Shown one piece after another: positions 1,176 to 56,037 of a DNA stretch of 64,000 bases. The stretch is taken from IMG/VR virus record IMGVR_UViG_3300033145_003233, positions 372,001-436,000 of that record; one strand, 5' to 3'. How positions within the stretch are numbered: the stretch's first letter is position 1; each line of letters starts with the position of its first letter. Below the pieces are notes generated by a model. It was not told where the DNA came from. It ran no database searches and worked only from the letters and a program-made list of their open reading frames with translations. The position numbers and the translations under genes were made by a program.

Positions 1176-1910
1176 TCATACCCCTTTATAAACGTTCTTC
1201 ACATATTTAGACAATATAAGATACGCCATAGTTAAGTTATCGGAATTAAAAACAAAATCTTCATACTTATAAGACGGTGACACTCTTAATAAATGACATG
1301 GAATAGTTGGCCTCACCAAATCCTCTGATATAAATTTACCAATCATTTCCATCTCTTCTTCTATCTTATCGTCAGAAAAATATAATGGGATGCTAATCTC
1401 TATATGAGGATTGGCAAAACGAATAGCCCAGTTATTACAAGCTTGTCGTATTCTATCTTTAATTACATAATGCTTAACACCAGCAATAGAATAAAATGAT
1501 TCCTCAGATCCCTTCCAATCTATATTAATAGCATCAGCTACCAAACAAATATATCTCCATGGCCTTTCCTCGACATAAGCATTAGTCTTTATAATAAACT
1601 TAAGATCATTCTTATGACATTCTTCTCCTAGTTCTATCAAAAATTCATAATGAATGGTAGGTTCATTAAATGTCATGCAAATACTATCACAATCGCTCTG
1701 TTTAGCCATAGTAACCAGCTGTAAGGGATCATAATGAAAAGACTTAACCTGCAAATCTTGCTGACTAATCTGCCAATTTTCACAATTATGAACTATGAAG
1801 CCATTAGCAACATAATTTTCATATCCTGGGACATTAAAATTATATACCTTCTGCTTCTTTTTTAATCTTTTAATAGATTTTATTTTTTTATATTCTAAAT
1901 TATCATCCAT
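1176..1910 (-). CDS. Split intein C-part (42 aa) fused to C-terminal part of AmmeMemoRadiSam-type radical SAM enzyme
   Basis: VYNFNV...NYVANGFIVHN/C (intein blocks F/G) followed by CENWQISQ...TFNEPT...TNAY...DAINIDWKG. Confidence 0.9.
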   Translation of the reverse strand: MDDNLEYKKIKSIKRLKKKQKVYNFNVPGYENYVANGFIVHNCENWQISQQDLQVKSFHYDPLQLVTMAKQSDCDSICMTFNEPTIHYEFLIELGEECHKNDLKFIIKTNAYVEERPWRYICLVADAINIDWKGSEESFYSIAGVKHYVIKDRIRQACNNWAIRFANPHIEISIPLYFSDDKIEEEMEMIGKFISEDLVRPTIPCHLLRVSPSYKYEDFVFNSDNLTMAYLILSKYVKNVYKGV

Positions 1911-1963
1911 AATATCATTGCACTGTCTTTCTCAGAATTACATGACTCTTATCTCACTTAATT

Positions 1964-3025
1964 TTAAAATGGATTGATTCTTTTATATATATGATTCGAA
2001 AACTTTTTTAGCAACTCTTGCCTTTCATTATAAGAAAGATCTTTTGTCTTATTTAACCAATTTCTACCCTGACATAAGACAACTTTTCCACATCTAAATT
2101 TTATATCATAATATTCATATTCATGCCACGCCTGGCCATATTGACAAGTTATGGACCATCGTTCTGTGTCTAATATTTTTTCGGAGATCCGCAAAGGATT
2201 CCCAATAATCCTTCTTACATCATTTTCGGTAGAACCGACTATGATATAATTCAATTTTGAGGTATAAATAGAAAAATCTTTATGGGCTTTTTTGAAATTT
2301 TCTTCTTCCATTTTTCTTATTTCTCCTATCCTCTTCTTCGCTATCCCCTCCTTTTGTTTATATTTTGATATATCGGAATAACCACTTTTTATTATCTCAC
2401 CATTATTTATCCATGCCTCGAAACCATCATCCCATATAAGATATATCTTATTATTGTTTTTATCGTATTCATAACAAATCCCAACGTTATTGCTGTCTAC
2501 GACCAAGACTCTATTCTCATTTTTATCATACCAGCACTGCCACCCATCTGCCCATTTAACATAAATAAATTTACCATCTACAGTTTTTCTATGCTCGTAA
2601 CCATCAGAAATCTTATAATAAATTGGATTATTACTTTTATCATATTCCCATTCCCACTGCTTATATCCATCAGATTCTTTTTGATAAATTTTATTATTAT
2701 TTTTATCATATTCAGCCCATATCTCATACCCTTCTGGGGACTTCTGATAGATGCAATTTTTACGAGTATCATAATTTTTTATATACCCTATAGCAGAATT
2801 ATATGACCCCACACCTACACTCTTAGTTCCTATCTTCCCAGTATAGGGATTTATATTCCCTTTAGTGCTCCAATTATTATAAGGATTACCATCAGGATTT
2901 GACCTATAGTGAGGAGCTACATAAGTCCCATTTTTGCGATAATATCCCTTAACACTAACATCAGCCATAAGAAGAGAAGTAGCTAGAGACATCATAATAA
3001 CTATTAAAATTATTAACTTTTTCAT
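1964..3025 (-). CDS. Secreted/membrane-anchored hypothetical protein with YD-like repeats
   Basis: Signal-peptide-like MKKLIILIVIMMSLA (likely start 3025); VKGYYRKNGTYVAPHYRS domain; EYDKNNN repeats. Confidence 0.6.
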   Translation of the reverse strand: MKKLIILIVIMMSLATSLLMADVSVKGYYRKNGTYVAPHYRSNPDGNPYNNWSTKGNINPYTGKIGTKSVGVGSYNSAIGYIKNYDTRKNCIYQKSPEGYEIWAEYDKNNNKIYQKESDGYKQWEWEYDKSNNPIYYKISDGYEHRKTVDGKFIYVKWADGWQCWYDKNENRVLVVDSNNVGICYEYDKNNNKIYLIWDDGFEAWINNGEIIKSGYSDISKYKQKEGIAKKRIGEIRKMEEENFKKAHKDFSIYTSKLNYIIVGSTENDVRRIIGNPLRISEKILDTERWSITCQYGQAWHEYEYYDIKFRCGKVVLCQGRNWLNKTKDLSYNERQELLKKFSNHIYKRINPF

Positions 3026-3087
3026 TTTGCTGTTCCTTATCAATTTTTCCACAATATTATCTTAATCTTAATCTCAATCTCAACATT

Positions 3088-3116
3088 ATTATATATTAAA
3101 TTGCTTTCACTTTCAA
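3088..3116 (-). promoter_or_regulatory. sigma70-like promoter TTGAAA-GTGA-17bp-TATAAT
   Basis: TTGAAAGTGAAAGCAATTTAATATATAAT on minus strand upstream of the 3025 gene; one of 10 similar motifs. Confidence 0.7.
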
Positions 3117-3142
3117 GAATTTTTTCATATTTTCAAAAATAA

Positions 3143-3159
3143 AGGAGGATTTTCCTCCT
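3143..3159. promoter_or_regulatory. Perfect 7-bp inverted repeat, possible operator
   Basis: AGGAGGA-TTT-TCCTCCT between divergent genes. Confidence 0.4.
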
Positions 3160-3216
3160 AAACTCATAATTATATAGGTAGAAAAACATAACAAATATAT
3201 TTAATAGGAGATAAAT

Positions 3217-3465
3217 ATGAGATATTTTAGATTAGTATTAAGTGAAAAACGAGGAGAATATTACTTTGACAGTATCCACGAAAAATTCGTCCACGCACAA
3301 AACAGAAATAAAGCATACAAAAAAGCTCTAAAAATAGCTGCCACATTCTTTAAAAACTATAAAAATGCTCCAACAGGAATTCCTGATGAAGATACTATCT
3401 TTTGGTTTAATGGTGATTATGCAGCTATCTGGATAAACGATTTAAAAGAAATTGAAATGATCTAA
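3217..3465 (+). CDS. Hypothetical protein
   Basis: ORF with AGGAG Shine-Dalgarno. Confidence 0.65.
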   Translation: MRYFRLVLSEKRGEYYFDSIHEKFVHAQNRNKAYKKALKIAATFFKNYKNAPTGIPDEDTIFWFNGDYAAIWINDLKEIEMI

Positions 3466-3533
3466 ATTATGAAATTTCACAATCTTTTACGATATAATAA
3501 TGACAATATTATGTAATAAAATAGGAGTAAAAA

Positions 3534-3683
3534 ATGAAAGATTGTAAAACCATTAGGATAGATGTCCCAACAGAGCTTCATGAGCGACTAAAAAAAAGTG
3601 CAAAAAAAGACTATGGCAATATAACATCTGTCGTTAGGAATTTAATAGTTCAATACGTTAAAGAAAAAGAGAAAGAGGGATAA
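3534..3683 (+). CDS. Ribbon-helix-helix (CopG/Arc-like) protein, not in ORF track
   Basis: MKDCKTIRIDVPTELHERLKKSAKKDYGNITSVVRNLIVQYVKEKEKEG; AGGAG SD; TAATG overlap with next gene. Confidence 0.7.
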   Translation: MKDCKTIRIDVPTELHERLKKSAKKDYGNITSVVRNLIVQYVKEKEKEG

Positions 3684-4712
3684 TGGGAAAATTTATAAAT
3701 CTAACTGATAAAAAATTTGGGCAATTAACAGTACTATCTCAAGCAAAATATCATAATAAAAGAATCCAATGGAAATGCAAATGCTCCTGTGGAAATTATA
3801 TCAATATTTGCACAAAAGACTTAAATAACGGGAAAAGAATATGCTGTAAAAAATGTGGCAAAACAAACTGCCTTATATGTGGCAAAAGAACAAAAAATAA
3901 AAAGATATGCTCCAACAAATGTAAAATAAAATTTGATAAATTATCAAAAAATCCATTACCACCTTTCTATTCCTATAAACATGCTGCTGCATATCTTCAA
4001 AAAGATCAAAGAACTATTAGAAAATGGGAAAATATTTTATATAAAATAGATAAAAATCTTAAATCTGATTTTAATCTAATAAAATGGAAAAACTGCAAAA
4101 TATGCAGGGATAAAACCCCATCAGCAAAATGCAGAGTAGGATACTGCAAAAAATGCTCTGAAAAAGGACTGGGACGTAAGAATACAGCAAAAATACTTTC
4201 TAAAAAATATAAGGGAAAAGGTAATCCAAATTACGTTCATGGCAAAAAAATGGAACATAGCAGAGAAAGAAGCGTCATGCATGATAGATGGGCAAAAAAA
4301 AATATTAAAAATAAAACCAAATGTATGCATGTTGAGTGGAAGAACAGATAAATTACATGTTCACCATATCTTGTCTTTTTCTATATTTCCGAAATTAAGG
4401 TATAAAATATGGAATGGACTTATTATAAACAGGTTTTATCACATAGAACTTCATCGTCTTCAGTTAGATCTTTTGCTTCTACCCACCTTCTGCTCTTTGT
4501 CATCACTGGATGTTCAGGAGTTAATCTCAACTTTTCTCCTTCTACCTCAAGTTCAATCAATTCTTCAGCTTCCCTATCAACAACATGTCCGACATGAGCT
4601 AATACGAGTTGTGGGTCGCTACTCGAATTATCCCAAACAACTATCTCTTCTCCATCCTCAATTTGCTCAATCTTCTTTGTCCCAATTGGAGTCGAGATTA
4701 GAGTTCCAGTAG
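3683..4712 (+). pseudogene. HNH homing endonuclease, frameshifted at A9 run 4294-4302
   Basis: N-part with KFGQLTV..WKCKCSCG and Zn fingers; HNH core (LHVHHI..FPKLR...NG...H) lies in the next frame; removing one A fuses them. Confidence 0.7.
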
Positions 4713-4995
4713 GCAAACAAAAAACACATTTTAAACTACAACCATATCCACCTATAGAAAAAGTTTTTGTACCAGGGAGAAAATGTTTAAATGGTTTCTT
4801 CTCTATAGGATCTATAGATATGGAAGAAATGTGATGATATCCTGATGGGACTACCTCATCGTCCGCCGCTCTCCTCGCCAAACATTGACCCAACTGCCCA
4901 TTTTTTAACAAACAAGAATTAGGACATAATAGGCATTGCACCTTATCATCTTGCTTTTGAAAAAGCTTTAATGTGTCATTCTTGTTCCTGAACAT
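4423..4995 (-). CDS. AmmeMemoRadiSam radical SAM N-part fused to split intein N-part (98 aa, 4719-4426)
   Basis: VQCLLCPNSC...DPIEKKP..HFLPG...GCSLKCVF then CLPTGT (block A) ... TPEHP (block B); likely ATG at 4995. Confidence 0.9.
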   Translation of the reverse strand: MFRNKNDTLKLFQKQDDKVQCLLCPNSCLLKNGQLGQCLARRAADDEVVPSGYHHISSISIDPIEKKPFKHFLPGTKTFSIGGYGCSLKCVFCLPTGTLISTPIGTKKIEQIEDGEEIVVWDNSSSDPQLVLAHVGHVVDREAEELIELEVEGEKLRLTPEHPVMTKSRRWVEAKDLTEDDEVLCDKTCL

Positions 4996-5614
4996 CTCTT
5001 TCCCTCTTGAAATCTTCTGACTCAACAACTTCATAAGCTCCAGAGGTTTCTGTTTCTTCATCTTCTCCCTGAGTTTTTCTCCAAGCACTCCCCACCAAAC
5101 AAAGACCATTAACATGATCTATTTCATGCTGAACTATGATGGACTCAAATCCTACAAACTTATCTTTCTGAGATTTTCCTTCCTCATCTACATAAGCCAC
5201 AACCACCTCTTTAGAACGCTCTACACCAACATAAAAATTCGGAAAAGAAAGACACCCTTCTCTCCCCATTTGTTTTTCTTCTCCCATCTCAATTATTTCA
5301 GGATTCACCAAAACTTTCATATCATTGGTTTTTCTGTTAGGACATAACACCACGACCTTTTTAAGATGCCCTATCTGAGAAGCAGATAATCCCACTCCAG
5401 AATCAGATAATTTCAAAATCTGTTTTAATTCCCTAACAATCGGAGAGATATCTTCCGAGTCATCAACGTTCTCGCAAGGGATCTTTAATATAGGATCATC
5501 CCATTTCCTAATAAGAGACATGAGTTTTTTCCTTCTTAGAAAAAACTCATTCTTACGTTGCAACCTCTTCTTCTTATTATCCCTAGCTCTCGCCTTTCCT
5601 TTAGATTTCGCCAT
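4976..5614 (-). CDS. def: Peptide deformylase
   Basis: GVGLSASQIG, EGCLS and QHEIDH motifs. Confidence 0.95.
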   Translation of the reverse strand: MAKSKGKARARDNKKKRLQRKNEFFLRRKKLMSLIRKWDDPILKIPCENVDDSEDISPIVRELKQILKLSDSGVGLSASQIGHLKKVVVLCPNRKTNDMKVLVNPEIIEMGEEKQMGREGCLSFPNFYVGVERSKEVVVAYVDEEGKSQKDKFVGFESIIVQHEIDHVNGLCLVGSAWRKTQGEDEETETSGAYEVVESEDFKRERDVQEQE

Positions 5615-7341: not shown

Positions 7342-7893
7342 TTACCATTGCCCTATTATACCACATTGACAATCACTTTCAAATTGTTTTTTTCTACTAT
7401 TTTCTTCGATATATAATACGGCATTTTTTAACAAAGGAAGGGGATCTCTAAATTTGCCCCCCAAACCTCTTTCGATCATTCCCAACACGCTATTACATTT
7501 ACGGCAAAGTAATCCTCTGGGATGCCCATTTTTATGATTATGATCTAAACATAATTTATTTTTAAATTCTAATTCATGAACTTCACAAATAGCACATTTA
7601 CCTTGCTGTTTTTTATATATTTCTTCATAACCGCCAATAGTTATGCTGATTTTGCGTTTTTTCCAAACAGACATCCTGCTTTTTAGAGGGTTTTTCTCTC
7701 TATATCTCTTACTTCTTAATTTCCTCTTCTCCTTATCCTCGGCATCTGGATTGTCTTTCCTATATTTCTTAATTCTTTTCAGTATTGCTTCTTTATTTTC
7801 TTTGTAATATTTTTTACTATATTCTTTAAAATACTCTTTCTTTCTTAAACGATATTCTTTATCATATTTTTTCTTGGCTTCTTTAGAGATCAT
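7342..7893 (-). CDS. Endonuclease VII-type homing endonuclease
   Basis: QQGKCAIC...LCLDHNH..G..RGLLC..CN. Confidence 0.85.
   Translation of the reverse strand: MISKEAKKKYDKEYRLRKKEYFKEYSKKYYKENKEAILKRIKKYRKDNPDAEDKEKRKLRSKRYREKNPLKSRMSVWKKRKISITIGGYEEIYKKQQGKCAICEVHELEFKNKLCLDHNHKNGHPRGLLCRKCNSVLGMIERGLGGKFRDPLPLLKNAVLYIEENSRKKQFESDCQCGIIGQW
7355..7382 (-). promoter_or_regulatory. sigma70-like promoter TTGAAA-GTGA-16bp-TATAAT
   Basis: TTGAAAGTGATTGTCAATGTGGTATAAT upstream of the kdsC-like gene. Confidence 0.65.
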
Positions 7894-8746
7894 TTCCTCC
7901 CCTTTTGATTTTTAATTTCTCACTATTATTTCTTTCATCTTCCGTCAAGTCAATATTTTTGTAACTCAATGACCTATGACAAGCTTTCAAATTCCTACAA
8001 AGTTTTTGCAATCCAATTGGCTCTAAACTAGCGGCGTTATCTGTTCCCTTGGCCGTCCTGTCTAAAGTAAAATGTCTCTCTATCCACTCTGCCCCTAAAA
8101 CGTAAGCACCAATATCTACAGCTATTCCTAAATGATGCCCGCTATAACCAACCCTCTCAAATACCCTTTTTAATGCTGTAATTTCCATCAAATATAATTC
8201 TTTAAATTTGACAGGATAACCAGAAGTCGTGTGATATACTACTATTCTGTTTTTCTTGTCATGAAAATAATTAAATAATTTTTCTTTCCCTTTTTTAGAA
8301 ATCATCCCCAAAGATATATGAACATCGCCATGATAATTATTAAAAAGAGTATCTAATAAAACATAATTTTCATTCATGGGAGATGGTATTTTGATGAAAT
8401 CTGGGTTAAGAGATGCTATCTCTAACGCAGAGTCCTCATCCCAGACAGAAGTAGAATACCCTATTTCTAACTCATCACAATAATCTTTCAATTCTACATG
8501 TTGAGGAATTGTAAATTCTAGATTAATCCTGTGTTTTAAATATGTTTCTCCAAAAGAATGCACAGGACAAGGATGCGGTCTATTATGCATATTCATAGGC
8601 ACTGCTTTTATCGGATTCCTTTTTTGAAATTTAACATAATCAGCACCGCACAATTTTGCCATTTGAATCATTTTCTTAGCTAAATCTATATCTCCTCGAT
8701 GATTACAACCTATCTCGGAAACTATTTTACATTTCTTGTATTCCAT
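7883..8746 (-). CDS. neuB: N-acetylneuraminate/nonulosonate synthase family, lacking C-terminal SAF domain
   Basis: EIGCNHRGD, VKFQKR, KIPS, GYSGH, IERHFTLDR motifs. Confidence 0.92.
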   Translation of the reverse strand: MEYKKCKIVSEIGCNHRGDIDLAKKMIQMAKLCGADYVKFQKRNPIKAVPMNMHNRPHPCPVHSFGETYLKHRINLEFTIPQHVELKDYCDELEIGYSTSVWDEDSALEIASLNPDFIKIPSPMNENYVLLDTLFNNYHGDVHISLGMISKKGKEKLFNYFHDKKNRIVVYHTTSGYPVKFKELYLMEITALKRVFERVGYSGHHLGIAVDIGAYVLGAEWIERHFTLDRTAKGTDNAASLEPIGLQKLCRNLKACHRSLSYKNIDLTEDERNNSEKLKIKRGGNDL

Positions 8747-8889
8747 TTTTCCCCCTTTTTATATTTCTTAATATATTCAAATAGAACATCTGTCACCAAT
8801 TGAGTGAATGTTTTTTTATTCTCCTTCGCTATTGCCTTACAAATAGATATAATTTCCACATCTAATTTCATATTAACTGGTTTTTTCAT
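8722..8889 (-). CDS. Small RHH-like DNA-binding protein, not in ORF track
   Basis: MKKPVNMKLDVEIISICKAIAKENKKTFTQLVTDVLFEYIKK...; beta-alpha-alpha pattern. Confidence 0.55.
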   Translation of the reverse strand: MKKPVNMKLDVEIISICKAIAKENKKTFTQLVTDVLFEYIKKYKKGEKWNTRNVK

Positions 8890-9557: not shown

Positions 9558-10038
9558 TTTCTAAATCTTTTAAAACAGTTCTAACTTTCATTATCGCCTC
9601 ACCCAACCAATTAGTTCCTCTCCAATTTTTAGAATCTAATATCTTCGAACTAGTAGCTCTTAACCCCACTCCCCAAATACAATCAGTAGGACTAGCTTCA
9701 ACGATAACTTTATCTCCACTATCCATCAATTGTTGTTTCAAATTGTCGTGTTGTGTAAACTTCGCATAATTAGCGTCAAAAACAACTTTTCTTGCTATCT
9801 TTTCCCATTTATTCTGATCAAAATTTTTAACTCGTCTACCCCAGGATTTTTGAGCAGCTGGATCAGAACTACTCATAATCTGACCAAGAGCATAATTATC
9901 ATCGAATAATTCTGCCTTCTTAATCATCATATATTGTTCGCATGTGCAGTATTTTATATTATCTATCACTATATCACATAAATGCCATTGTGAAAAAATC
10001 CCACCATAAAAGAAAATATATTTATCAGTAACTTTCAT
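9550..10038 (-). CDS. NADAR (YbiA-like) family protein
   Basis: FSQW, EQYMM..KA.LF.D, VEASPTDCIWGVG, WRGTNWLG. Confidence 0.93.
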   Translation of the reverse strand: MKVTDKYIFFYGGIFSQWHLCDIVIDNIKYCTCEQYMMIKKAELFDDNYALGQIMSSSDPAAQKSWGRRVKNFDQNKWEKIARKVVFDANYAKFTQHDNLKQQLMDSGDKVIVEASPTDCIWGVGLRATSSKILDSKNWRGTNWLGEAIMKVRTVLKDLENG

Positions 10039-10606
10039 CTAAAAACCCATTATTTTTTAAATTATTATACACATTTTTAATCCATGTTATAAAATCATTT
10101 TTAGACATAGTATCTTTGGACCTATTACACTTTTTACAACAAGGAACACAATTGCTTTCTTCATAACCAACATTATTATCTATTCTATCAATACCATTAT
10201 ATTTAAAATCTCCATAATAATTCTTAATCTCTCTATAATTACTTGGAGGGAAACCACAATAATAACAATTCTTATTTGTCACCTCTTTAAAAAACTCTTT
10301 AGATATGTTAAATTCAATATTTCTTCTTATAGCATTCTTTCTATATCCAGCATAAACAACTCCCATTACTCCATCACCACTATTTAAACGCTTATCACAA
10401 CCGCAACTTTTTATTTTTCCTTTTTCTAGAACATCAGATCGAACCCATATATTATTTCCACAAGAGCATTCACACAACCAGTAAGATCTACCATGTCCTG
10501 CCTTGCTTGTTCTTTCTTTGCTTTTTGAACTATGCCTTATTTCTCTTTTATCAGTAACACATAACAGATTTACTTGAATATTACTCAGATCTTTTATTTT
10601 CCCCAT
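10025..10606 (-). CDS. HNH homing endonuclease
   Basis: WLCECSCG, SCGC, CYYCG, NGIDRIDN..GY...NCVPCC..CN. Confidence 0.85.
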   Translation of the reverse strand: MGKIKDLSNIQVNLLCVTDKREIRHSSKSKERTSKAGHGRSYWLCECSCGNNIWVRSDVLEKGKIKSCGCDKRLNSGDGVMGVVYAGYRKNAIRRNIEFNISKEFFKEVTNKNCYYCGFPPSNYREIKNYYGDFKYNGIDRIDNNVGYEESNCVPCCKKCNRSKDTMSKNDFITWIKNVYNNLKNNGFLDESY

Positions 10607-10766
10607 TATTTCTTTCCTGTTTAGAATATTGAACCATATAATCCCTAATCACCTCTGATATGGTTTTATATTCATTTTTACAGGACTTCTTAAAAGACTT
10701 ATATAATGAAGGTTGAACCATAACCCTAATTTCTTCTGTTAATTTTTCTCCAGCATTCTTTTTCAT
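10581..10766 (-). CDS. RHH-like regulator
   Basis: IRVMVQPSLYKSFKKSC..EYKTISEVIRDYM; close paralog at 13635-13805. Confidence 0.7.
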   Translation of the reverse strand: MKKNAGEKLTEEIRVMVQPSLYKSFKKSCKNEYKTISEVIRDYMVQYSKQERNNGENKRSE

Positions 10767-10776
10767 TATATCTTAT

Positions 10777-10791
10777 TTCTGTATTACAGAA
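10777..10791. promoter_or_regulatory. Palindromic operator TTCTGTA-T-TACAGAA
   Basis: Identical palindrome precedes the paralogous RHH at 13825-13839. Confidence 0.65.
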
Positions 10792-10800
10792 CAAAATCCT

Positions 10801-11091
10801 TTATTTATTTTCTTCTATGATTACACTTAAATCATTATTCATTATTTTTCTAATTGATGGACTAGGGCACTCCTCAATTTTCTGCATAATCTTTACTGCT
10901 TGTTTATGCCACAAATCACTGATATAAGGACAACAAAATGCATCATGCAGATGCCCCCTACGAGACATCGCCTCCCCAAAACTAGTAGCACCATGCACTC
11001 TGCGCCTTACATCACAAATTGCCCCGCAAACATCGCATTTCTTTTCTGAAACAGAATCTGGTTCAGCACTAGAAGACCCATAGCCACTCAT
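10801..11091 (-). CDS. Hypothetical Cys/His-rich protein
   Basis: CDVCG..HDAFCCP. Confidence 0.65.
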   Translation of the reverse strand: MSGYGSSSAEPDSVSEKKCDVCGAICDVRRRVHGATSFGEAMSRRGHLHDAFCCPYISDLWHKQAVKIMQKIEECPSPSIRKIMNNDLSVIIEENK

Positions 11092-11092
11092 T

Positions 11093-11359
11093 CTATGCTC
11101 CGCTTTTTAATTTTTCCAGCTCATCTCCATTGACAGCACTAATACAGTTCTTTCCACCCTCGCCCTTCCATTGAAATACAAAATTATCATTTCCAGCCTG
11201 ACTATCTTGAGACATTATAATTCCATCTACTTTTTTGCCTCCTCTAGTCAACGTAACTCTCCTACCATGCAAACTAGGTGGAGCGATAATAACTGTGCCA
11301 ACCGGCTTAGCCTCTTCAGCAACTACTTTTTTCTTTTTTTTCTTGGCTTGTTTTGCCAT
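11093..11359 (-). CDS. Hypothetical protein
   Basis: ORF with GGAG SD. Confidence 0.65.
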   Translation of the reverse strand: MAKQAKKKKKKVVAEEAKPVGTVIIAPPSLHGRRVTLTRGGKKVDGIIMSQDSQAGNDNFVFQWKGEGGKNCISAVNGDELEKLKSGA

Positions 11360-11384
11360 TTTTTTCTCCCTTTAACTTTAAATA

Positions 11385-11945
11385 TTACTTAATTTCTTTT
11401 TTATCTATATCTAATATTTCAAAACGATCTTTTATTCCACCCTCTGCCCTTCTCTCTCTCTCCTTTTCTACATAATACTTTATCTCCCCCTGAGTGATAA
11501 GAAACCTATCATTCACCACGACCCCCATATCTAAATCATCAACATGTCTACCAATAAAATTTTTAGAAAATTCTTGATGACGAGAAACTACTTCCCAATC
11601 TATCTTATCGTGATATTGATCCATAAAAGATTCTGACAACTTTTGTTTAACACACACAATATCCCAACAATGGATATAAGTCGCAAAAACCCCTAAAAAC
11701 TCATTAGATACCTTATTCTCGGCAAGAAGTACTCTCCAATTAATTTTAACAGGAAATCGTAAAAGAGAACATTTTAAATTATATTGAGTTATATAATGCT
11801 CAACAGATTTTTGAACTGTCCTGCTATAAGCTATAGAATCATCAGGATGCCTCCCGACTACAACCCTACTAGAGTCATTACAATTAGTGCCGTGACGATT
11901 GTTCCCATTAGGGTTATTCCTAATTATTGGACCTTTTTTAGCCAT
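11385..11945 (-). CDS. Tryptophan-repeat-like protein with near-terminal RFEILDI tag
   Basis: Repeats W..V...Q.LSE.F; ends DRFEILDIDKKEIK. Confidence 0.6.
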   Translation of the reverse strand: MAKKGPIIRNNPNGNNRHGTNCNDSSRVVVGRHPDDSIAYSRTVQKSVEHYITQYNLKCSLLRFPVKINWRVLLAENKVSNEFLGVFATYIHCWDIVCVKQKLSESFMDQYHDKIDWEVVSRHQEFSKNFIGRHVDDLDMGVVVNDRFLITQGEIKYYVEKERERRAEGGIKDRFEILDIDKKEIK

Positions 11946-11947
11946 TT

Positions 11948-12778
11948 TTAAAACTCGAATATCTGTCCTTCTTTAACAAAACCAGCAAATCCATCTGCTA
12001 CAGCATCAGGCATTACACCATACCTTTTGCTACCTTCCTCATCAAATTTAGATAAATCTGTATAATGATAAAGCCATATATCTTTTTTACGATCAGAAGG
12101 CATCCTTTTTAATATATCATAATTACAATGAATACCACCCGAATTAAGGGTGTCAGCATCTTGAAAAACTAAATCTATTTCCTCATCCCAAATCTCGTCA
12201 GGAGGACAAGACACAGTATCAGAAGAGATATATAATCTTTTCTTGTATTTATCTAAACCCTTACGATGATGATAAATTATCGACAAGCCATAACTATACA
12301 TATCTCCCACAAAAGAATCTACATGAAGATTCTTAACGAGATTACACTCCATTGTCGTAAACCAAAAATCAAGATGTCTATCATAAACTATATGAAGATT
12401 AAAATAAGTTTCAAGAGTCTCAAATCTAGTTCCCTTATGTTGCCTGTTCATGGCCGGTGATAACATCTGCCATAAACTATCAACCAAAGACTCATGAATA
12501 TAAAGATATATCTTACGTTTTAAAACGAAATAATTATAATAAGCCAACCAGCTCAAACCACCCATATGATCATAATGCAAATGACTAATATAAACGCCAT
12601 CTATTTCTTCTACTTTTCTATTCGCATTCTTCAGAGATTGACTGATATCCTCCCCACAATCAATCAATAAGGTATATTTGTCCCTCTTAGCTTCTGTCGC
12701 CGGAATATCTATCAACATATTAGAATTAAATCCTTCTGACAAAGCACCTGAGACACCTAAAAACGTTAATTTTGACAC
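11948..12778 (-). CDS. MBL-fold metallo-hydrolase, Apyc1 (anti-Pycsar)-like
   Basis: LLIDCG, ISHLHYDH (HxHxDH), SSDT, FQD, IH..Y..L..MP....IWLYHY. Confidence 0.75.
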   Translation of the reverse strand: MSKLTFLGVSGALSEGFNSNMLIDIPATEAKRDKYTLLIDCGEDISQSLKNANRKVEEIDGVYISHLHYDHMGGLSWLAYYNYFVLKRKIYLYIHESLVDSLWQMLSPAMNRQHKGTRFETLETYFNLHIVYDRHLDFWFTTMECNLVKNLHVDSFVGDMYSYGLSIIYHHRKGLDKYKKRLYISSDTVSCPPDEIWDEEIDLVFQDADTLNSGGIHCNYDILKRMPSDRKKDIWLYHYTDLSKFDEEGSKRYGVMPDAVADGFAGFVKEGQIFEF

Positions 12779-12841
12779 AATTATACCCTTTATACTAAAA
12801 TCTTAATATTCTTTATATCCGCTAATTTCTCTATTAATATA

Positions 12842-13657
12842 CTAACATAAAATTTCATTTTTGTCAAGATTATAATAAACTTTTTTTATCCATTCTATAA
12901 ATTCTCTTTTGGACATTATATCCTTTGCCCTATTACATATAGAACAACAAGGGACACAATTATCCAATTCATAGCCTTTTAAATTAACGACCCTATCTAT
13001 ACCGTTATAATGAAAACCTCCATTATTATTAGGAGCTGGATTATAATTAGATAAATCAGACCCACAATAAGAACAATTTTTCTGAGTAATTTCTTTAAAT
13101 TCTTCTTTATTTAATCTAAAAACTATTCCTTTTCTATTGGCCCTATTTCTATACTGAGAATAAATAGCATTAAAAGCTGCTTCTCCTTTTTTCTTACTGT
13201 TTACTTCTGATGCTCTTTCTTTTGCCAAACATCCACAACTCCTTGTACGCTTCTTACCAGAAACAAGAGAAGCCATTTGAATCCATTTTTCATCACCACA
13301 ATCACATTTACACAACCATTTTGTAACAAATCTTTTACCTGATTTAAACCTTTTGTGACTTGAAGTAACTACTAATTTGCCAAATCTTTTACCGCTTAAA
13401 TCAATTAAATCTTTTTTACCACTAATTTTATTTGCTCTATTCTTCATTAAAATAGAGTTATTTTCTTTTCTATAACAACCGCAACTCACATAAGAGCCAG
13501 AAGTGATAGAAGATCCTCTAATCCATTTCTTATTTCCGCAATCGCAAATACATAACCAATACGCTTTCTTGCTGTTATACTCTCTTCTCAATTCATATTC
13601 AGAAGACACAGCCAATCTCCCGAACTTTTGCCCCTCAAGATTTTTTACTTTTCCCAT
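12842..13657 (-). CDS. HNH homing endonuclease
   Basis: Two G.KFG.L.V..WLC.CDCG..SCGC modules plus NGIDR...NCVPCC..CN. Confidence 0.85.
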   Translation of the reverse strand: MGKVKNLEGQKFGRLAVSSEYELRREYNSKKAYWLCICDCGNKKWIRGSSITSGSYVSCGCYRKENNSILMKNRANKISGKKDLIDLSGKRFGKLVVTSSHKRFKSGKRFVTKWLCKCDCGDEKWIQMASLVSGKKRTRSCGCLAKERASEVNSKKKGEAAFNAIYSQYRNRANRKGIVFRLNKEEFKEITQKNCSYCGSDLSNYNPAPNNNGGFHYNGIDRVVNLKGYELDNCVPCCSICNRAKDIMSKREFIEWIKKVYYNLDKNEILC

Positions 13658-13805
13658 TATCCTTCTCCTGTTTAGAATATTGAACCATATAGTCCCTAAT
13701 TACTTCTGATATGGTTTTATAATCATCATTACAGGCATTTTTAAAAGACTTATATAATGAAGGATAAACCATAACTCTAATTTCTTCTGTCATTTTTTCT
13801 TTCAT
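13635..13805 (-). CDS. RHH-like regulator, not in ORF track
   Basis: MKEKMTEEIRVMVYPSLYKSFKNACNDDYKTISEVIRDYMVQYSKQE...; GGAG SD. Confidence 0.7.
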   Translation of the reverse strand: MKEKMTEEIRVMVYPSLYKSFKNACNDDYKTISEVIRDYMVQYSKQEKDNGKSKKS

Positions 13806-13824
13806 ATCTTCTCCATTATATTAT

Positions 13825-13839
13825 TTCTGTATTACAGAA
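13825..13839. promoter_or_regulatory. Palindromic operator TTCTGTA-T-TACAGAA
   Basis: Second copy of the 10777-10791 palindrome. Confidence 0.65.
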
Positions 13840-13874
13840 TAAAATCCTTTATTTTATATAAAATAATTAATCTA

Positions 13875-54213: not shown

Positions 54214-55533
54214 TTATACTCTTATAAGGAATTTCCAATCACTTTCCAATCTTTTTATAGATTTTTCTTTATCTTCGTCATATTTTATCCTATGTAGTAT
54301 AATATTATTTTCTTTACAAAATTGAGTGTCCAACTTGTCCTTCAAACGATATTTTTTAAGATTTTTATTAGCCCTATATAAAGAAAACCTTCCATAAGTA
54401 ATAGGCTTAAAATGTTGCTCTCCGTCATATTCCACTATTATATTAGTAGAATCCTTTTCCAACCAGAAATCACAATACCTTCTATGCTTATAGTCTTTAT
54501 ATTCATCCCATATTTTTTTATTTGGGATAATATTCCAATCTTCGAAATATTTTAATAAAAGTTCCCTTACCTTACCCTCATTCTTTTTGTAGCAAAAAGG
54601 ACACCCCTGCCCCTTAACTCGATTAGATACGGAGCTTTCCCACTCATGACTCTCATTTTTAGAACAAATCCACCAAACTTTTCTATCTGACCCATAAGAC
54701 ACCTCCTTAGCAGTTAATTGACCATTCTTAGTGGGATGCCATTCTTTTGCTAATTCTGGATATTTAAGTTTCAAACAATTTTTTTTAGAAACCCTTTTAC
54801 CTCCACAATATGGACAATTATCCCCTCTAGCCCTATGATTAACAATTGTCATCCACTCATGTCTCTTATTGCATTTCCACCACACCTTTTTATTACAACC
54901 TCCCGTAATATCTTTAGCAGTTAATTTACCGTTCTTAGTAGGATGCCATTCTTTAGCTATTTCTGGGTATTTAGTTTCTAAACAATTATCCTTACAAGCT
55001 TTACTCCCCGAACAATATGGACAATTTCTCCCATTTGACCTATTATTAACAGTAGCCTCCCATTCATGTCCCTTACCACATTTCCACCACACTTTTTTAT
55101 TACTTTGTGGCATCACATCCTCAGGAGTTAAATTTTTATTTTTGATAAAATGCCATTCCTTAGATAATATAGAATTCTTAACAGACAAACAAGTTAGTGA
55201 AGTCGTTCCAGATAATTTTTCTCTATAACAATATAAACAATTACAACCATTTTTTCTATTATTTATAACTGCCTCCCATTCATGCCCCTTACCACATTTC
55301 CACCAAACCTTTTTCCCACTGCCTGCTGTCAACTCTTTTGGACTTAACCCTCTCCTATCATTTTTCTCATAATTCCATTCTTTCATTAACTTTTTGTGAG
55401 TCTGATATAATGACTTTTTATCATTTCCTCCTCTACGATAATAATGAAAATAAAAACATTTTTTCGAGCAATAGTTCTTCTGTTGCTTTACCAACCCTTT
55501 CCCACAATTCAAACATTCTTTATTCTTTCCCAT
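54214..55533 (-). CDS. Homing endonuclease with DUF4379-like zinc-ribbon repeats and Vsr/DUF559-like nuclease
   Basis: EWH..KN...KVWWKC..GHEW...R..G..CPYC x4; CDFWL..IVEYDGEQH. Confidence 0.82.
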   Translation of the reverse strand: MGKNKECLNCGKGLVKQQKNYCSKKCFYFHYYRRGGNDKKSLYQTHKKLMKEWNYEKNDRRGLSPKELTAGSGKKVWWKCGKGHEWEAVINNRKNGCNCLYCYREKLSGTTSLTCLSVKNSILSKEWHFIKNKNLTPEDVMPQSNKKVWWKCGKGHEWEATVNNRSNGRNCPYCSGSKACKDNCLETKYPEIAKEWHPTKNGKLTAKDITGGCNKKVWWKCNKRHEWMTIVNHRARGDNCPYCGGKRVSKKNCLKLKYPELAKEWHPTKNGQLTAKEVSYGSDRKVWWICSKNESHEWESSVSNRVKGQGCPFCYKKNEGKVRELLLKYFEDWNIIPNKKIWDEYKDYKHRRYCDFWLEKDSTNIIVEYDGEQHFKPITYGRFSLYRANKNLKKYRLKDKLDTQFCKENNIILHRIKYDEDKEKSIKRLESDWKFLIRV

Positions 55534-55712
55534 TATTTCTCCTCCTCACATTTATATGCCCTTCTTTGGACTTCTCCAATACTTACCTCTATCCTCCTAT
55601 TATTTAATCGTTTGATAATACCTACTACCTTGAAATAAGCTCTATCAGGGTCCTTCTCATTAAGAAACAATCGAGATAACCCACCTACCAACCTATCATT
55701 TTCTTTTAACAT
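55533..55712 (-). CDS. Small hypothetical protein, not in ORF track
   Basis: AGGAG SD, 59 aa, TAATG overlap with the endonuclease gene. Confidence 0.5.
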   Translation of the reverse strand: MLKENDRLVGGLSRLFLNEKDPDRAYFKVVGIIKRLNNRRIEVSIGEVQRRAYKCEEEK

Positions 55713-55866
55713 TTCTATTCTCCTATAAGAAAACTTATATTTTCTTATACTTTCTTAATTTCTATATAAAATCCTTCTTTTATTTTTATTTTCTGTGTAA
55801 AAAATAACGAAGGATAATAATTATTCCGATACAATAGTATAAGAACAAAATATTAAGGAGCAAAAA

Positions 55867-56037
55867 ATGGCCAAAAAAGAAAAAACAGATAAGATAATCA
55901 ATTTTGCAATTAAACAATCTCTCTATGATAAATTTAAAAAGATATGCGATCAACGCTATAAGAGTCTGAGCGAGCAGATTAGAGAATTGATAGTGGAAAA
56001 AGTAAATAGGGAAGATAACATTAAAGAATCTAAGTAG
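55867..56037 (+). CDS. RHH-like regulator, not in ORF track
   Basis: AAGGAG SD; INFAIKQSLYDKFKKIC..RYKSLSEQIRELI, similar to the 10581 and 13635 RHHs. Confidence 0.7.
   Translation: MAKKEKTDKIINFAIKQSLYDKFKKICDQRYKSLSEQIRELIVEKVNREDNIKESK

What the first reader, a model, noticed from the sequence alone, without database searches (positions are those of the whole stretch)
10025..13850. Duplicated self-regulating RHH + HNH cassette with a shared palindromic operator
Seen: two cassettes (10025-10800, 12842-13850) each consist of AAGGATTTT, the palindrome TTCTGTA-T-TACAGAA, an RHH gene (shared TEEIRVMV.PSLYKSFK..C...YKTISEVIRDYMVQYSKQE) and an overlapping HNH gene with similar nuclease domains but different N-terminal arms. 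Inference: a mobile unit in which the homing endonuclease travels with its own repressor and operator, which is unusual for free-standing HEGs.
Basis: partly seen in the sequence, partly recalled or inferred. Interest (0 to 1): 0.62.

Follow-up and report, generated by a model that had tools for sequence, protein, structure and literature searches.

The report
Homing nuclease cassettes carrying their own repressor
A 548-kb phage carries two copies of a small mobile-looking unit (a promoter with a perfectly conserved palindrome, a tiny ribbon-helix-helix repressor gene and an overlapping PacI-like HNH nuclease gene), and related phages show the whole unit is inherited, gained or lost together, which suggests a selfish nuclease gene that carries its own off-switch.

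Summary
Two cassettes on the minus strand (10025-10803 and 12842-13851) each hold a promoter-like block, the 15-bp palindrome TTCTGTA-A-TACAGAA, a 56-61-aa RHH gene (78% identical) and an overlapping nuclease gene (44% identical, with one versus two zinc-ribbon arms).

- **Nuclease:** it belongs to a large phage family with no Pfam model, and its closest solved relative is restriction enzyme PacI.
- **Palindrome:** it occurs exactly twice in the 548-kb genome and is 98.7% conserved across ten lineages. RHH third codon positions are only 58% identical.
- **Promoter:** It is the upstream element of a promoter-like motif that recurs across the genome, and the palindrome fills that motif's spacer.
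- **Linkage:** wherever the contig reached far enough downstream, the RHH is followed by this nuclease. Nuclease relatives in other phages have no RHH.
- **Sites:** one cassette type always follows a cytidylyltransferase gene and the other always precedes NADAR.
- **Gain and loss:** a related phage has a clean empty site at NADAR and a LAGLIDADG endonuclease in the other slot. A mosaic NADAR 5' end suggests co-conversion.

The best reading is an autorepressed free-standing homing endonuclease unit, which would be a new variant of a known kind. DNA binding, cleavage and homing have not been tested.

The parts
10794..10803 (-). Upstream (-35-like) promoter element TAAAGGATTT of cassette 1. It overlaps the stop codon of the upstream 96-aa gene.
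   Evidence: The 8-mers AAAGGATT and TAAAGGTT are 8-12 times enriched upstream of genes. The bipartite motif occurs 16 times against 1.8 expected.
10777..10791 (.). Perfect palindrome TTCTGTA-A-TACAGAA, the proposed RHH operator. It fills the promoter spacer, and its right arm covers the 'GAA' promoter element.
   Evidence: Only two exact copies in 548 kb; 98.7% mean pairwise identity in 10 lineages.
10765..10776 (-). AT-rich -10-like stretch (TAAGATATAAT) that abuts the RHH1 start codon. There is no Shine-Dalgarno sequence, so the mRNA is probably leaderless or has a very short leader.
   Evidence: Other promoters of this class place the ATG at the same distance.
10581..10766 (-). RHH1, a 61-aa ribbon-helix-helix protein and the proposed autorepressor.
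10025..10606 (-). HNH1, 193 aa: one zinc-ribbon arm plus a PacI-like beta-beta-alpha-metal nuclease domain. Its start lies inside the RHH1 tail and its end overlaps the NADAR start by 14 nt.
13842..13851 (-). Upstream promoter element TAAAGGATTT of cassette 2.
13825..13839 (.). Second copy of the palindrome/operator.
13806..13820 (-). TATAAT (13815-13820) followed by the Shine-Dalgarno sequence GGAG (13811-13814), just before the RHH2 start codon.
13635..13805 (-). RHH2, 56 aa.
12842..13657 (-). HNH2, 271 aa: two zinc-ribbon arms plus a PacI-like nuclease domain.
3534..3683 (+). RHH5, a 49-aa paralogue (39% identity to RHH1). It is the first gene of a third RHH + nuclease cassette.
3683..4460 (+). 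Zinc-arm/NUMOD1 protein whose canonical HNH motif (HVHHI...N...H) continues in another frame after an A9 run at about 4293-4301. This is either a broken or a slippage-dependent HNH endonuclease.
55867..56037 (+). RHH3, a 56-aa paralogue, transcribed divergently from a homing-endonuclease-like gene.
54214..55533 (-). 439-aa protein with four DUF4379 zinc-finger repeats and a C-terminal endonuclease-like region. Its promoter is of the same AAGGATTTT class (55776, minus strand).

Best explanation
Each cassette is a free-standing homing-endonuclease unit that carries its own negative feedback.

Proposed mechanism:
1. A phage-type promoter drives a two-gene operon. The promoter reads TAAAGGATTT, then a spacer, then xGAA plus a TATA-rich -10-like box.
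2. The first product is a small RHH dimer or tetramer. It binds the 15-bp palindrome that fills the promoter spacer and blocks RNA polymerase. This holds expression of both genes at a low level.
3. The second gene starts inside the tail of the first, so its translation is coupled to RHH translation. It encodes a PacI-like HNH nuclease with one to three zinc-ribbon DNA-binding arms.
4. The nuclease cuts cassette-free alleles near its insertion site. One type is anchored to the 3' end of the cytidylyltransferase gene and the other to the 5' end of NADAR.
5. Repair from a cassette-bearing genome then copies promoter, operator, RHH and nuclease together.

Shown here: the anatomy, the fold and family of the nuclease, co-inheritance, operator conservation, site specificity, an empty site and a mosaic flank.

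Inferred: DNA binding by the RHH, repression, cleavage and homing.
For: (1) Nuclease identity.
- A profile of the family hits PacI at E 2.5e-6.
- The AlphaFold model has pLDDT 89, and Foldseek's top hit is PacI at E 3.5e-4, followed by other HNH enzymes.
- Invariant residues are CxYC, YNGxDR, GY, N and CxxCN..K.
- PacI is an active enzyme that uses Asp and Asn for the metal and Tyr as general base (PMC4081073).

(2) RHH identity.
- Every weak hit is an RHH protein: pRN1 ORF56 at E 0.007, NikR at 0.019, AvtR and ParG.
- Pfam hits to RHH_1, RHH_9, ParG, NikA-like and RepB-RCR_reg are all below threshold.
- The paralogues hit PHROG Arc-like and CopG-like repressor families.

(3) Operator.
- There are two exact copies in 548 kb against 0 expected.
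- Mean pairwise identity in 10 lineages is 98.7%. The 20 nt upstream are 74% identical, the region from -60 to -21 is 35%, and RHH third codon positions are 58%.
- It sits in the spacer of a motif found 16 times against 1.8 expected, 11 of them intergenic.

(4) Linkage.
- Wherever the contig extends far enough, the RHH is followed by an overlapping nuclease of this family.
- None of 5 loci in unrelated phages has an RHH.

(5) Mobility signals.
- There are two fixed sites with variable far flanks.
- L045 has the 97-aa gene running directly into NADAR with no cassette and LAGLIDADG_2 in the other slot (E 4e-20).
- The nuclease is frameshifted in L013 and L023 while the RHH is intact.
- In L013 the first 60 nt of NADAR are 84% identical to cassette-bearing genomes and 53% to L045. 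Nucleotides 120-240 are 87-95% identical to L045.

(6) Selection. RHH dN is 0.07-0.16 with dS about 1-2. The nuclease domain has dN 0.15-0.5.
Against: - No experiment supports binding, repression, cleavage or homing.
- All RHH family hits are below curated thresholds.
- Fold searches with the RHH monomer model found nothing.
- No canonical sigma-70 promoter is detected upstream of the RHH genes. The promoter assignment rests on motif enrichment, with no mapped transcription start.
- The operator never varies, so co-variation with RHH residues cannot be tested.
- The cytidylyltransferase/MBL slot has no clean empty allele, only alternative cargo.
- The flank mosaic rests on about 60 nt.
- The frameshifts could be assembly errors.
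- RHH trees do not separate the two cassette types.
Confidence: 0.6

Rival explanations
1. This is a controller-plus-nuclease weapon, not a mobile element. The RHH acts like the C protein of a restriction system, timing or limiting a PacI-like nuclease that degrades host DNA or DNA of competing phages. The phage's own DNA is protected in some other way.
For: - The closest solved relative is a restriction enzyme, PacI.
- A small regulator gene upstream of and overlapping an endonuclease gene, with a palindrome at its own promoter, is the layout of C-protein-controlled restriction operons (my own knowledge).
- The cassettes are retained at the same two sites in many lineages.
Against: - No methyltransferase lies nearby.
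- There is presence/absence at a clean site.
- A LAGLIDADG homing endonuclease occupies the same slot in a relative.
- The nuclease is decayed in two lineages.
- The number of DNA-binding arms varies.
- Relatives elsewhere sit as lone genes between conserved phage genes, as homing endonucleases do.
Confidence: 0.15
2. This is a toxin-antitoxin-like addiction pair. The RHH is an antitoxin that binds and neutralises the nuclease as well as repressing the operon.
For: - Many type II antitoxins are RHH proteins encoded just upstream of their toxin and repress their own operon (my own knowledge).
- There is a weak Pfam hit to 'addiction module antidote' (E 0.006).
- ParD appears among the weak PDB hits.
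Against: - The RHH is only 56-61 aa.
- Beyond the DNA-binding core it has a tail of about 12 residues, and that tail's sequence is constrained by the overlapping nuclease start.
- The nuclease family normally exists without any partner.
- No structural evidence for contact was obtained.
Confidence: 0.08
3. The palindrome acts as an RNA hairpin in the 5' leader, giving translational control as in other free-standing homing endonucleases, or it is simply part of the promoter. In this reading it is not an RHH binding site.
For: - RNA hairpins upstream of start codons were reported for 15 of 16 free-standing endonuclease genes in fractured genes (PMC2677866).
- The cassette 1 region folds at -6.9 kcal/mol with z -2.4.
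Against: - The hairpin is weak: 5 pairs and -3.4 to -4.4 kcal/mol in cassette 2, with z -0.8.
- It does not cover the Shine-Dalgarno sequence or the start codon.
- A 7+1+7 palindrome suits a dimeric protein, not a hairpin loop.
- The sequence is invariant, with no compensatory changes, in 10 lineages.
- Other promoters of the same class have unrelated spacers.
Confidence: 0.07
4. The RHH is a regulator of the surrounding sugar-nucleotide and NADAR genes, and the nuclease merely hitch-hikes next to it.
For: The cassettes sit in a conserved island that includes cytidylyltransferase, NeuB and hydrolase genes. The genes downstream are on the same strand.
Against: - The palindrome occurs nowhere else in the genome.
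- The RHH is absent when the nuclease is absent (L045).
- Genes downstream of the cytidylyltransferase-type cassette differ in every lineage.
Confidence: 0.05

Closest known systems
I-TevI autorepression (phage T4 td intron endonuclease)
   Same: A homing endonuclease gene whose promoter is overlapped by an operator, so that expression limits itself (PMC2988022).
   Different: I-TevI is its own repressor, acting through its DNA-binding domain, and its operator resembles its homing site. Here a separate RHH gene is proposed to do the job, and it travels with the nuclease.
C-protein-controlled restriction-modification operons (for example C.PvuII, C.AhdI)
   Same: A small regulator gene lies upstream of, and is often overlapping and co-transcribed with, an endonuclease gene, and a palindromic box sits at its own promoter (my own knowledge). 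The nuclease here is PacI-like.
   Different: C proteins are helix-turn-helix proteins, not RHH. There is no methyltransferase here. The distribution looks like that of a homing element.
CopG / pRN1 ORF56 type RHH autorepressors
   Same: These are RHH proteins of about 50 aa encoded first in an operon with an overlapping downstream gene. They bind an inverted repeat in their own promoter (my own knowledge). ORF56 is the best PDB sequence hit (E 0.007).
   Different: Those operons control plasmid replication genes, not a nuclease.
Restriction endonuclease PacI
   Same: The same variant of the HNH fold, with two Cys4 zinc sites and the GxDR...GY...N...CxxCN..K motif. The catalytic His is replaced.
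   Different: PacI is a 142-aa homodimeric bacterial restriction enzyme without N-terminal zinc-ribbon arms. Identity is about 21%.
Free-standing HNH and GIY-YIG endonucleases of T4-like phages (mob and seg genes) and of 'fractured genes'
   Same: These are intergenic insertions between conserved genes, with sporadic distribution, co-conversion of flanks and tightly limited expression (PMC2988022, PMC2677866).
   Different: Their known controls are promoter choice, RNA hairpins and RNA processing. No dedicated repressor gene inside the mobile unit is described in the papers I found.

Membership tests
Ribbon-helix-helix (Arc/MetJ/CopG) DNA-binding proteins | Sequence-profile match to RHH families | tested here: inconclusive
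   All hits are RHH proteins, but all are weak:
- Pfam RHH_9, RHH_1, ParG, NikA-like and RepB-RCR_reg fall below their gathering scores.
- The PDB profile search gives ORF56 at E 0.007 and NikR at 0.019.
- The paralogues hit PHROG Arc-like repressor families at E 2.7e-5.
Ribbon-helix-helix (Arc/MetJ/CopG) DNA-binding proteins | Strand-helix-helix topology of about 45 residues | tested here: met
   The AlphaFold monomer model has extended residues about 10-17, then helices 19-29 and 36-59 (pLDDT 75). The alternating hydrophobic pattern IRVMV fits the strand. Fold searches with the monomer model were uninformative.
Ribbon-helix-helix (Arc/MetJ/CopG) DNA-binding proteins | Binds repeats or a palindrome as a dimer or tetramer | not testable with these tools
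   The support is indirect only: an invariant 15-bp palindrome lies 10-26 nt upstream of every RHH gene of this clade.
HNH (beta-beta-alpha-metal) nucleases, PacI-like branch | Beta-beta-alpha-metal fold with cysteine zinc sites | tested here: met
   The model has pLDDT 89. Foldseek's top hit is PacI at E 3.5e-4 and probability 1.0, followed by Gme HNH, McrA and Cas9 HNH. Invariant CxYC and CxxC.
HNH (beta-beta-alpha-metal) nucleases, PacI-like branch | Metal-binding Asp and Asn, with Tyr instead of the His general base | tested here: inconclusive
   D140, R141, N152, N161, Y136 and Y148 are invariant in 37 sequences, and the motif aligns with PacI GVDR...GY...N...CNRIK. I could not read the PacI structure paper, so I did not establish which Tyr matches the PacI base.
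HNH (beta-beta-alpha-metal) nucleases, PacI-like branch | DNA cleavage activity | not testable with these tools
   This needs purified protein.
Free-standing homing endonuclease genes | Own gene between conserved genes, not inside an intron or intein | tested here: met
Free-standing homing endonuclease genes | Present or absent at the same site among related genomes | tested here: met
   L045 has the 97-aa gene directly followed by NADAR. L013 and L022 lack cassette 2 after the cytidylyltransferase gene. A LAGLIDADG_2 gene occupies that slot in L045.
Free-standing homing endonuclease genes | Co-conversion of flanking sequence | tested here: inconclusive
   The NADAR 5' end in L013 is mosaic. 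The first 60 nt group with cassette-bearing genomes and the rest groups with cassette-free L045. The tract is short and this is a single case.
Free-standing homing endonuclease genes | Cleaves the cassette-free allele and is copied into it | not testable with these tools
   This needs cleavage assays and mixed infections.
C-protein-controlled restriction-modification systems | Cognate methyltransferase next to the nuclease | tested here: not met
   The neighbours are NADAR, a metallo-beta-lactamase-fold protein (Apyc1-like), a cytidylyltransferase and small unknown proteins.
C-protein-controlled restriction-modification systems | Helix-turn-helix controller protein | tested here: not met
   The regulator matches RHH families only.
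Type II toxin-antitoxin modules with an RHH antitoxin | Antitoxin has a toxin-binding extension and forms a complex with the toxin | not testable with these tools
   The tail beyond the RHH core is only about 12 residues. Complex formation needs an experiment.

The most novel reading that the evidence does not exclude
In this clade of huge phages, RHH repressors may be a general, portable 'safety catch' for selfish nucleases. All five RHH paralogues of the genome sit next to homing-endonuclease-like genes of three different kinds:
- PacI-like HNH (two cassettes)
- canonical HNH in the gap of a split-intein gene
- DUF4379 zinc-finger nucleases (two divergent pairs)

The repressor, its operator and the nuclease would then move as one module. 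This would be a mode of control not described for homing endonucleases in the papers I found.
Probability: 0.35. Interest if true: 0.7.

Novelty: new variant of a known kind. Interest (0 to 1): 0.55.

Why it matters
Homing endonucleases must be kept at low levels so that they do not damage their carrier. The known solutions are promoter choice, RNA hairpins and self-repression by the nuclease itself.

A dedicated repressor and operator packaged inside the mobile unit would be a further solution. It would bridge homing endonucleases, controller-regulated restriction systems and toxin-antitoxin logic.

It would also give three practical things:
- a compact, testable repressor-operator pair (a 56-61-aa protein and a 15-bp site)
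- a first functional handle on a very large PacI-like phage nuclease family that no Pfam model covers
- a candidate promoter class for an uncultured 548-kb phage

Tried and rejected
- **Alternative genetic code.** Rejected. The standard code gives 86% coverage by ORFs of at least 100 aa.
- **Pfam on the nucleases.** No hit even at E 10.
- **Sigma-70 promoter scan.** Nothing upstream of the RHH genes, and the overall count was at chance.
- **A loose regular expression for the promoter.** Not enriched: 6 against 4.6 expected. The tighter bipartite form was enriched.
- **Foldseek and VIA-align with the RHH monomer model.** No meaningful match, as expected for an obligate dimer modelled alone.
- **Complex prediction of HNH1 with RHH1.** No verdict, so it is evidence neither for nor against binding.
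- **PDB sequence search with the C-terminal part of the DUF4379 nuclease.** Nothing.
- **Literature searches.** I found no description of an RHH paired with a homing endonuclease. One search was badly worded and useless. The PacI structure paper is not held.
- **Operator pattern in IMG/VR.** It found only the already known relative.
- **Operator pattern in metagenomes.** The scan found 101 stretches, of which 80 were returned as loci. Of these, 6 have the RHH immediately downstream and 74 are taken as chance matches. Those 74 were screened only automatically for RHH and nuclease ORFs and were not examined further. None was identified as human.
- **A recent tandem duplication.** Considered and rejected, because each cassette type occurs alone in other phages.
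- **The large representative protein search.** Not run. The statement that the pairing is confined to this clade therefore rests on word-based and BLAST searches only.

Full report
**Setting.** The window is bases 372001-436000 of a 547,943-bp virus record judged complete, with 33.6% G+C. The standard bacterial code fits: ORFs of at least 100 aa cover 86% of the genome. Almost all genes in the region lie on the minus strand.

**Check of the observation.** Both cassettes are present as described.
- Cassette 1, read on the minus strand: TAAAGGATTT (10803-10794), the palindrome TTCTGTA-A-TACAGAA (10791-10777), RHH1 (10766-10581, 61 aa) and HNH1 (10606-10025, 193 aa).
- Cassette 2: the same block at 13851-13842, the palindrome at 13839-13825, TATAAT and GGAG, RHH2 (13805-13635, 56 aa) and HNH2 (13657-12842, 271 aa).
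- The nuclease gene starts 26 nt (cassette 1) or 23 nt (cassette 2) inside the RHH gene, behind a Shine-Dalgarno sequence. This suggests coupled translation.
- The RHH proteins are 78% identical and the nucleases 44%.
- HNH2 has two copies of a zinc-ribbon module (CxCxCG...SCGC) and HNH1 has one. The 'different arms' are therefore a difference in module number.
- The exact palindrome occurs twice in the window and twice in the whole genome, against 0 expected. AAGGATTTT alone is not significant.

**What the proteins are.**
- *Nuclease family.* Pfam has no model for these nucleases. PHROGs place them with HNH endonucleases and endonuclease VII. A word-based search found more than 500 relatives, none carrying a Pfam domain for the nuclease.
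- *Conserved residues.* An alignment of 37 sequences shows an invariant zinc ribbon and the core CxYC...YNGxDR...GY...N...CxxCN..K.
- *Closest structure.* A profile of this alignment hits restriction enzyme PacI (E 2.5e-6). The AlphaFold model (pLDDT 89) matches PacI best (E 3.5e-4), then other HNH enzymes. PacI is active although it lacks the usual catalytic His; it uses Asp and Asn for the metal and a Tyr as base (PMC4081073). The Asp-Arg motif here is therefore compatible with activity.
- *Distribution.* Relatives occur in cultured Klebsiella, Streptomyces, Pseudomonas, Lactococcus, Acinetobacter, Xanthomonas, Rhizobium and crAss-like phages, annotated as HNH endonuclease or hypothetical protein.
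- *Small protein.* It gives only weak matches, but all of them are RHH proteins. Its model has an extended N-terminus and two helices.

**The promoter and the operator.**
- Eight-mers such as TAAAGGTT and AAAGGATT are 8-12 times enriched upstream of genes in this genome.
- The instances share a second element 12-14 nt downstream, CGAA followed by a TATA-rich box.
- The bipartite pattern occurs 16 times against 1.8 expected. Eleven of these lie in the 6.8% of the genome that is intergenic.
- In the two cassettes, and only there, the spacer of this motif is the palindrome. Its right arm (CAGAA) takes the place of the CGAA element.
- A protein bound there would sit between the two promoter elements.
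- In cassette 1 the start codon follows the TATA box directly, without a Shine-Dalgarno sequence. Two other promoters of the class do the same, which suggests leaderless messages. These points are inference, because no transcription start has been mapped.

**Relatives.** Nineteen proteins are 71-85% identical to RHH1.
- *Linkage.* Contexts were recovered from one IMG/VR contig and many metagenome contigs. Wherever the contig extends far enough downstream, the RHH is followed by an overlapping nuclease of the PacI-like family with one, two or three arms.
- *Operator conservation.* The palindrome lies upstream of the RHH in every case. Over ten distinct lineages it is 98.7% identical. The 20 nt upstream are 74% identical, the region further upstream 35%, RHH codon positions 1 and 2 are 90% and position 3 is 58%. 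The operator is thus better conserved than the protein-coding sequence.
- *Selection.* RHH dN is 0.07-0.16 with dS near saturation. The nuclease domain evolves faster, with dN 0.15-0.5.
- *Within this genome.* The two RHH copies have the lowest dS of all pairs (0.32, against 0.98 for their nucleases). This hints at gene conversion between the copies, but only 47 codons are involved.

**Two site-specific types.**
- One type has a one-arm nuclease of about 193 aa and always lies directly upstream of NADAR (window, L013, L022, L027). The gene on its other side varies.
- The other type has two or three arms and always lies directly after the stop codon of a cytidylyltransferase gene (window, L014, L023, L024, L025). 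The gene on its other side varies (MBL, NADAR, thioredoxin or unknown).
- The window is thus not a recent duplication. It carries both old types.

**Gain and loss.**
- A 351-kb relative (L045) has homologues of both flanking genes, the 97-aa gene and NADAR, directly adjacent. About 770 bp, comprising promoter, operator, RHH and nuclease, are missing.
- In the same genome the slot between the cytidylyltransferase and MBL genes holds a LAGLIDADG_2 endonuclease (E 4e-20). L013 and L022 hold other small genes there.
- The nuclease is frameshifted in L013 (in the arm) and in L023 (at the end of the catalytic core), while the RHH is intact.
- In L013 the first 60 nt of NADAR are 84% identical to other cassette-bearing genomes but 53% to L045. 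Nucleotides 120-240 are 87-95% identical to L045. The downstream genes also group L013 with L045.
- This mosaic is what co-conversion during homing would leave, but the tract is short.

**The pairing is a speciality of this clade.** Five loci of the nuclease family in unrelated phages have no RHH and no palindrome. A 595-kb phage has an RHH 47% identical that is followed by a different small protein.

**More RHH-nuclease pairs in the same genome.** The genome has five RHH paralogues.
- *The third paralogue.* RHH5 (3534-3683) is followed, with overlapping stop and start codons, by a protein with the same N-terminal arm. Its canonical HNH motif continues in another frame after a run of nine A.
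- *Location of this third cassette.* It lies in the gap of a split-intein gene. The N-terminal half of a radical-SAM-type protein with the intein N-part is at 4423-5115 (minus strand). The intein C-part (...GFIVHN|C) with the remainder of the protein is at 1176-1910 (minus strand). This is the 'fractured gene' layout described by Dassa et al. (PMC2677866).
- *The fourth and fifth paralogues.* The fourth (55867-56037) and the fifth (outside the window, genome 438986-439135) each face a paralogous DUF4379 zinc-finger protein. That protein matches PHROG families annotated as homing and intron-encoded endonucleases. The promoter of the nuclease beside the fourth paralogue is of the same class as the cassette promoters.
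- *Operators.* These three paralogues do not have the TTCTGTA palindrome. This fits their different strand residues.

**Mechanism and rivals.**
- *Best-supported model.* An autorepressed operon inside a free-standing homing-endonuclease unit.
- *Closest analogues.* I-TevI, which represses its own promoter (PMC2988022); C-protein-controlled restriction operons; and CopG/ORF56 operons.
- *Non-mobile controller-plus-nuclease weapon.* This is less likely given the empty site, the endonuclease hot spot and the decayed copies.
- *Toxin-antitoxin reading.* It is weakened by the very short RHH tail and by the many partnerless relatives.
- *RNA hairpin reading.* It is weakened by low stability (-3.4 to -6.9 kcal/mol) and by invariance without compensatory change.

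**Limits.** Everything about function is inferred.
- The RHH assignment rests on consistent but sub-threshold matches.
- The promoter rests on motif statistics.
- Relatives come mostly from short metagenome contigs.
- The exhaustive protein search was not run.
- The metagenome pattern scan returned 74 loci without an RHH. I screened these only automatically and did not inspect them. None was taken for human.

Noticed in passing
window 1176-1910 (-) and 4423-5115 (-), with 1911-4422 between: A radical-SAM-type gene is split by a split intein. The N-part ends ...GCSLKCVF plus the intein N-half (CLPTGTLI...). The C-part begins with the intein C-half (...NGFIVHN) followed by CENWQ.... The gap holds a 362-aa secreted repeat protein, an 82-aa ORF and the third RHH + HNH cassette on the opposite strand. 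This is the 'fractured gene' layout of PMC2677866.
   Followed up: partly
window 3683-4460 (+), A9 run at about 4293-4301: The nuclease of the third cassette needs a frame change at a run of nine A to join its zinc-arm/NUMOD1 part to a canonical HNH motif (HVHHI...N...H). This could be a pseudogene, an assembly error or programmed slippage.
   Followed up: partly
window 54214-56037; genome 437367-439135 (outside the window, L003): Two paralogous divergent pairs, each an RHH paralogue facing a roughly 440-aa protein. That protein has four DUF4379 treble-clef zinc fingers and a C-terminal region matching PHROG families annotated as homing or intron-encoded endonucleases. The nuclease promoter at 55776 (-) is of the AAGGATTTT class.
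   Followed up: partly
window 7342-8889 (-): A 55-aa DUF6364 protein (sub-threshold Pfam match; its counterpart in L045 also matches my RHH profile at E 3.8e-5) overlaps NeuB, which in turn overlaps an Endonuclease_7 (HNH) gene of 183 aa. L045 shows the same overlapping trio, and L022 has the same three genes in the same order.
   Followed up: partly
whole genome; examples at genome 37846, 107132, 170122, 176081, 178689, 182030: A promoter-like bipartite motif, TAAAGG(T/A)TTT - about 13 nt - CGAA - TATA-rich box, recurs upstream of genes (16 against 1.8 expected). Other strongly enriched upstream words (TTTTCCAGACAAATG, GAAAGTGAAAG) point to further promoter or regulatory classes.
   Followed up: partly
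window 11948-12778 (-): A metallo-beta-lactamase-fold protein lies between the two cassettes. Its match to the anti-Pycsar nuclease family Apyc1 is near threshold (47.9 bits against a cut-off of 50). It is a possible counter-defence gene.
   Followed up: no
window 10581-10766 versus 13635-13805: The two RHH genes of this genome have much lower synonymous divergence (dS 0.32) than their nucleases (0.98), and lower than any RHH pair from different genomes. This may reflect gene conversion between the two promoter-RHH segments.
   Followed up: partly
L048 (LR756511.1) 2455-2480: Upstream of the 47%-identical RHH of a 595-kb phage lies a different imperfect inverted repeat (TGTACGGA / TCTGTACA, 5 nt apart) that contains the same TCTGTA core. 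There is no nuclease downstream.
   Followed up: no
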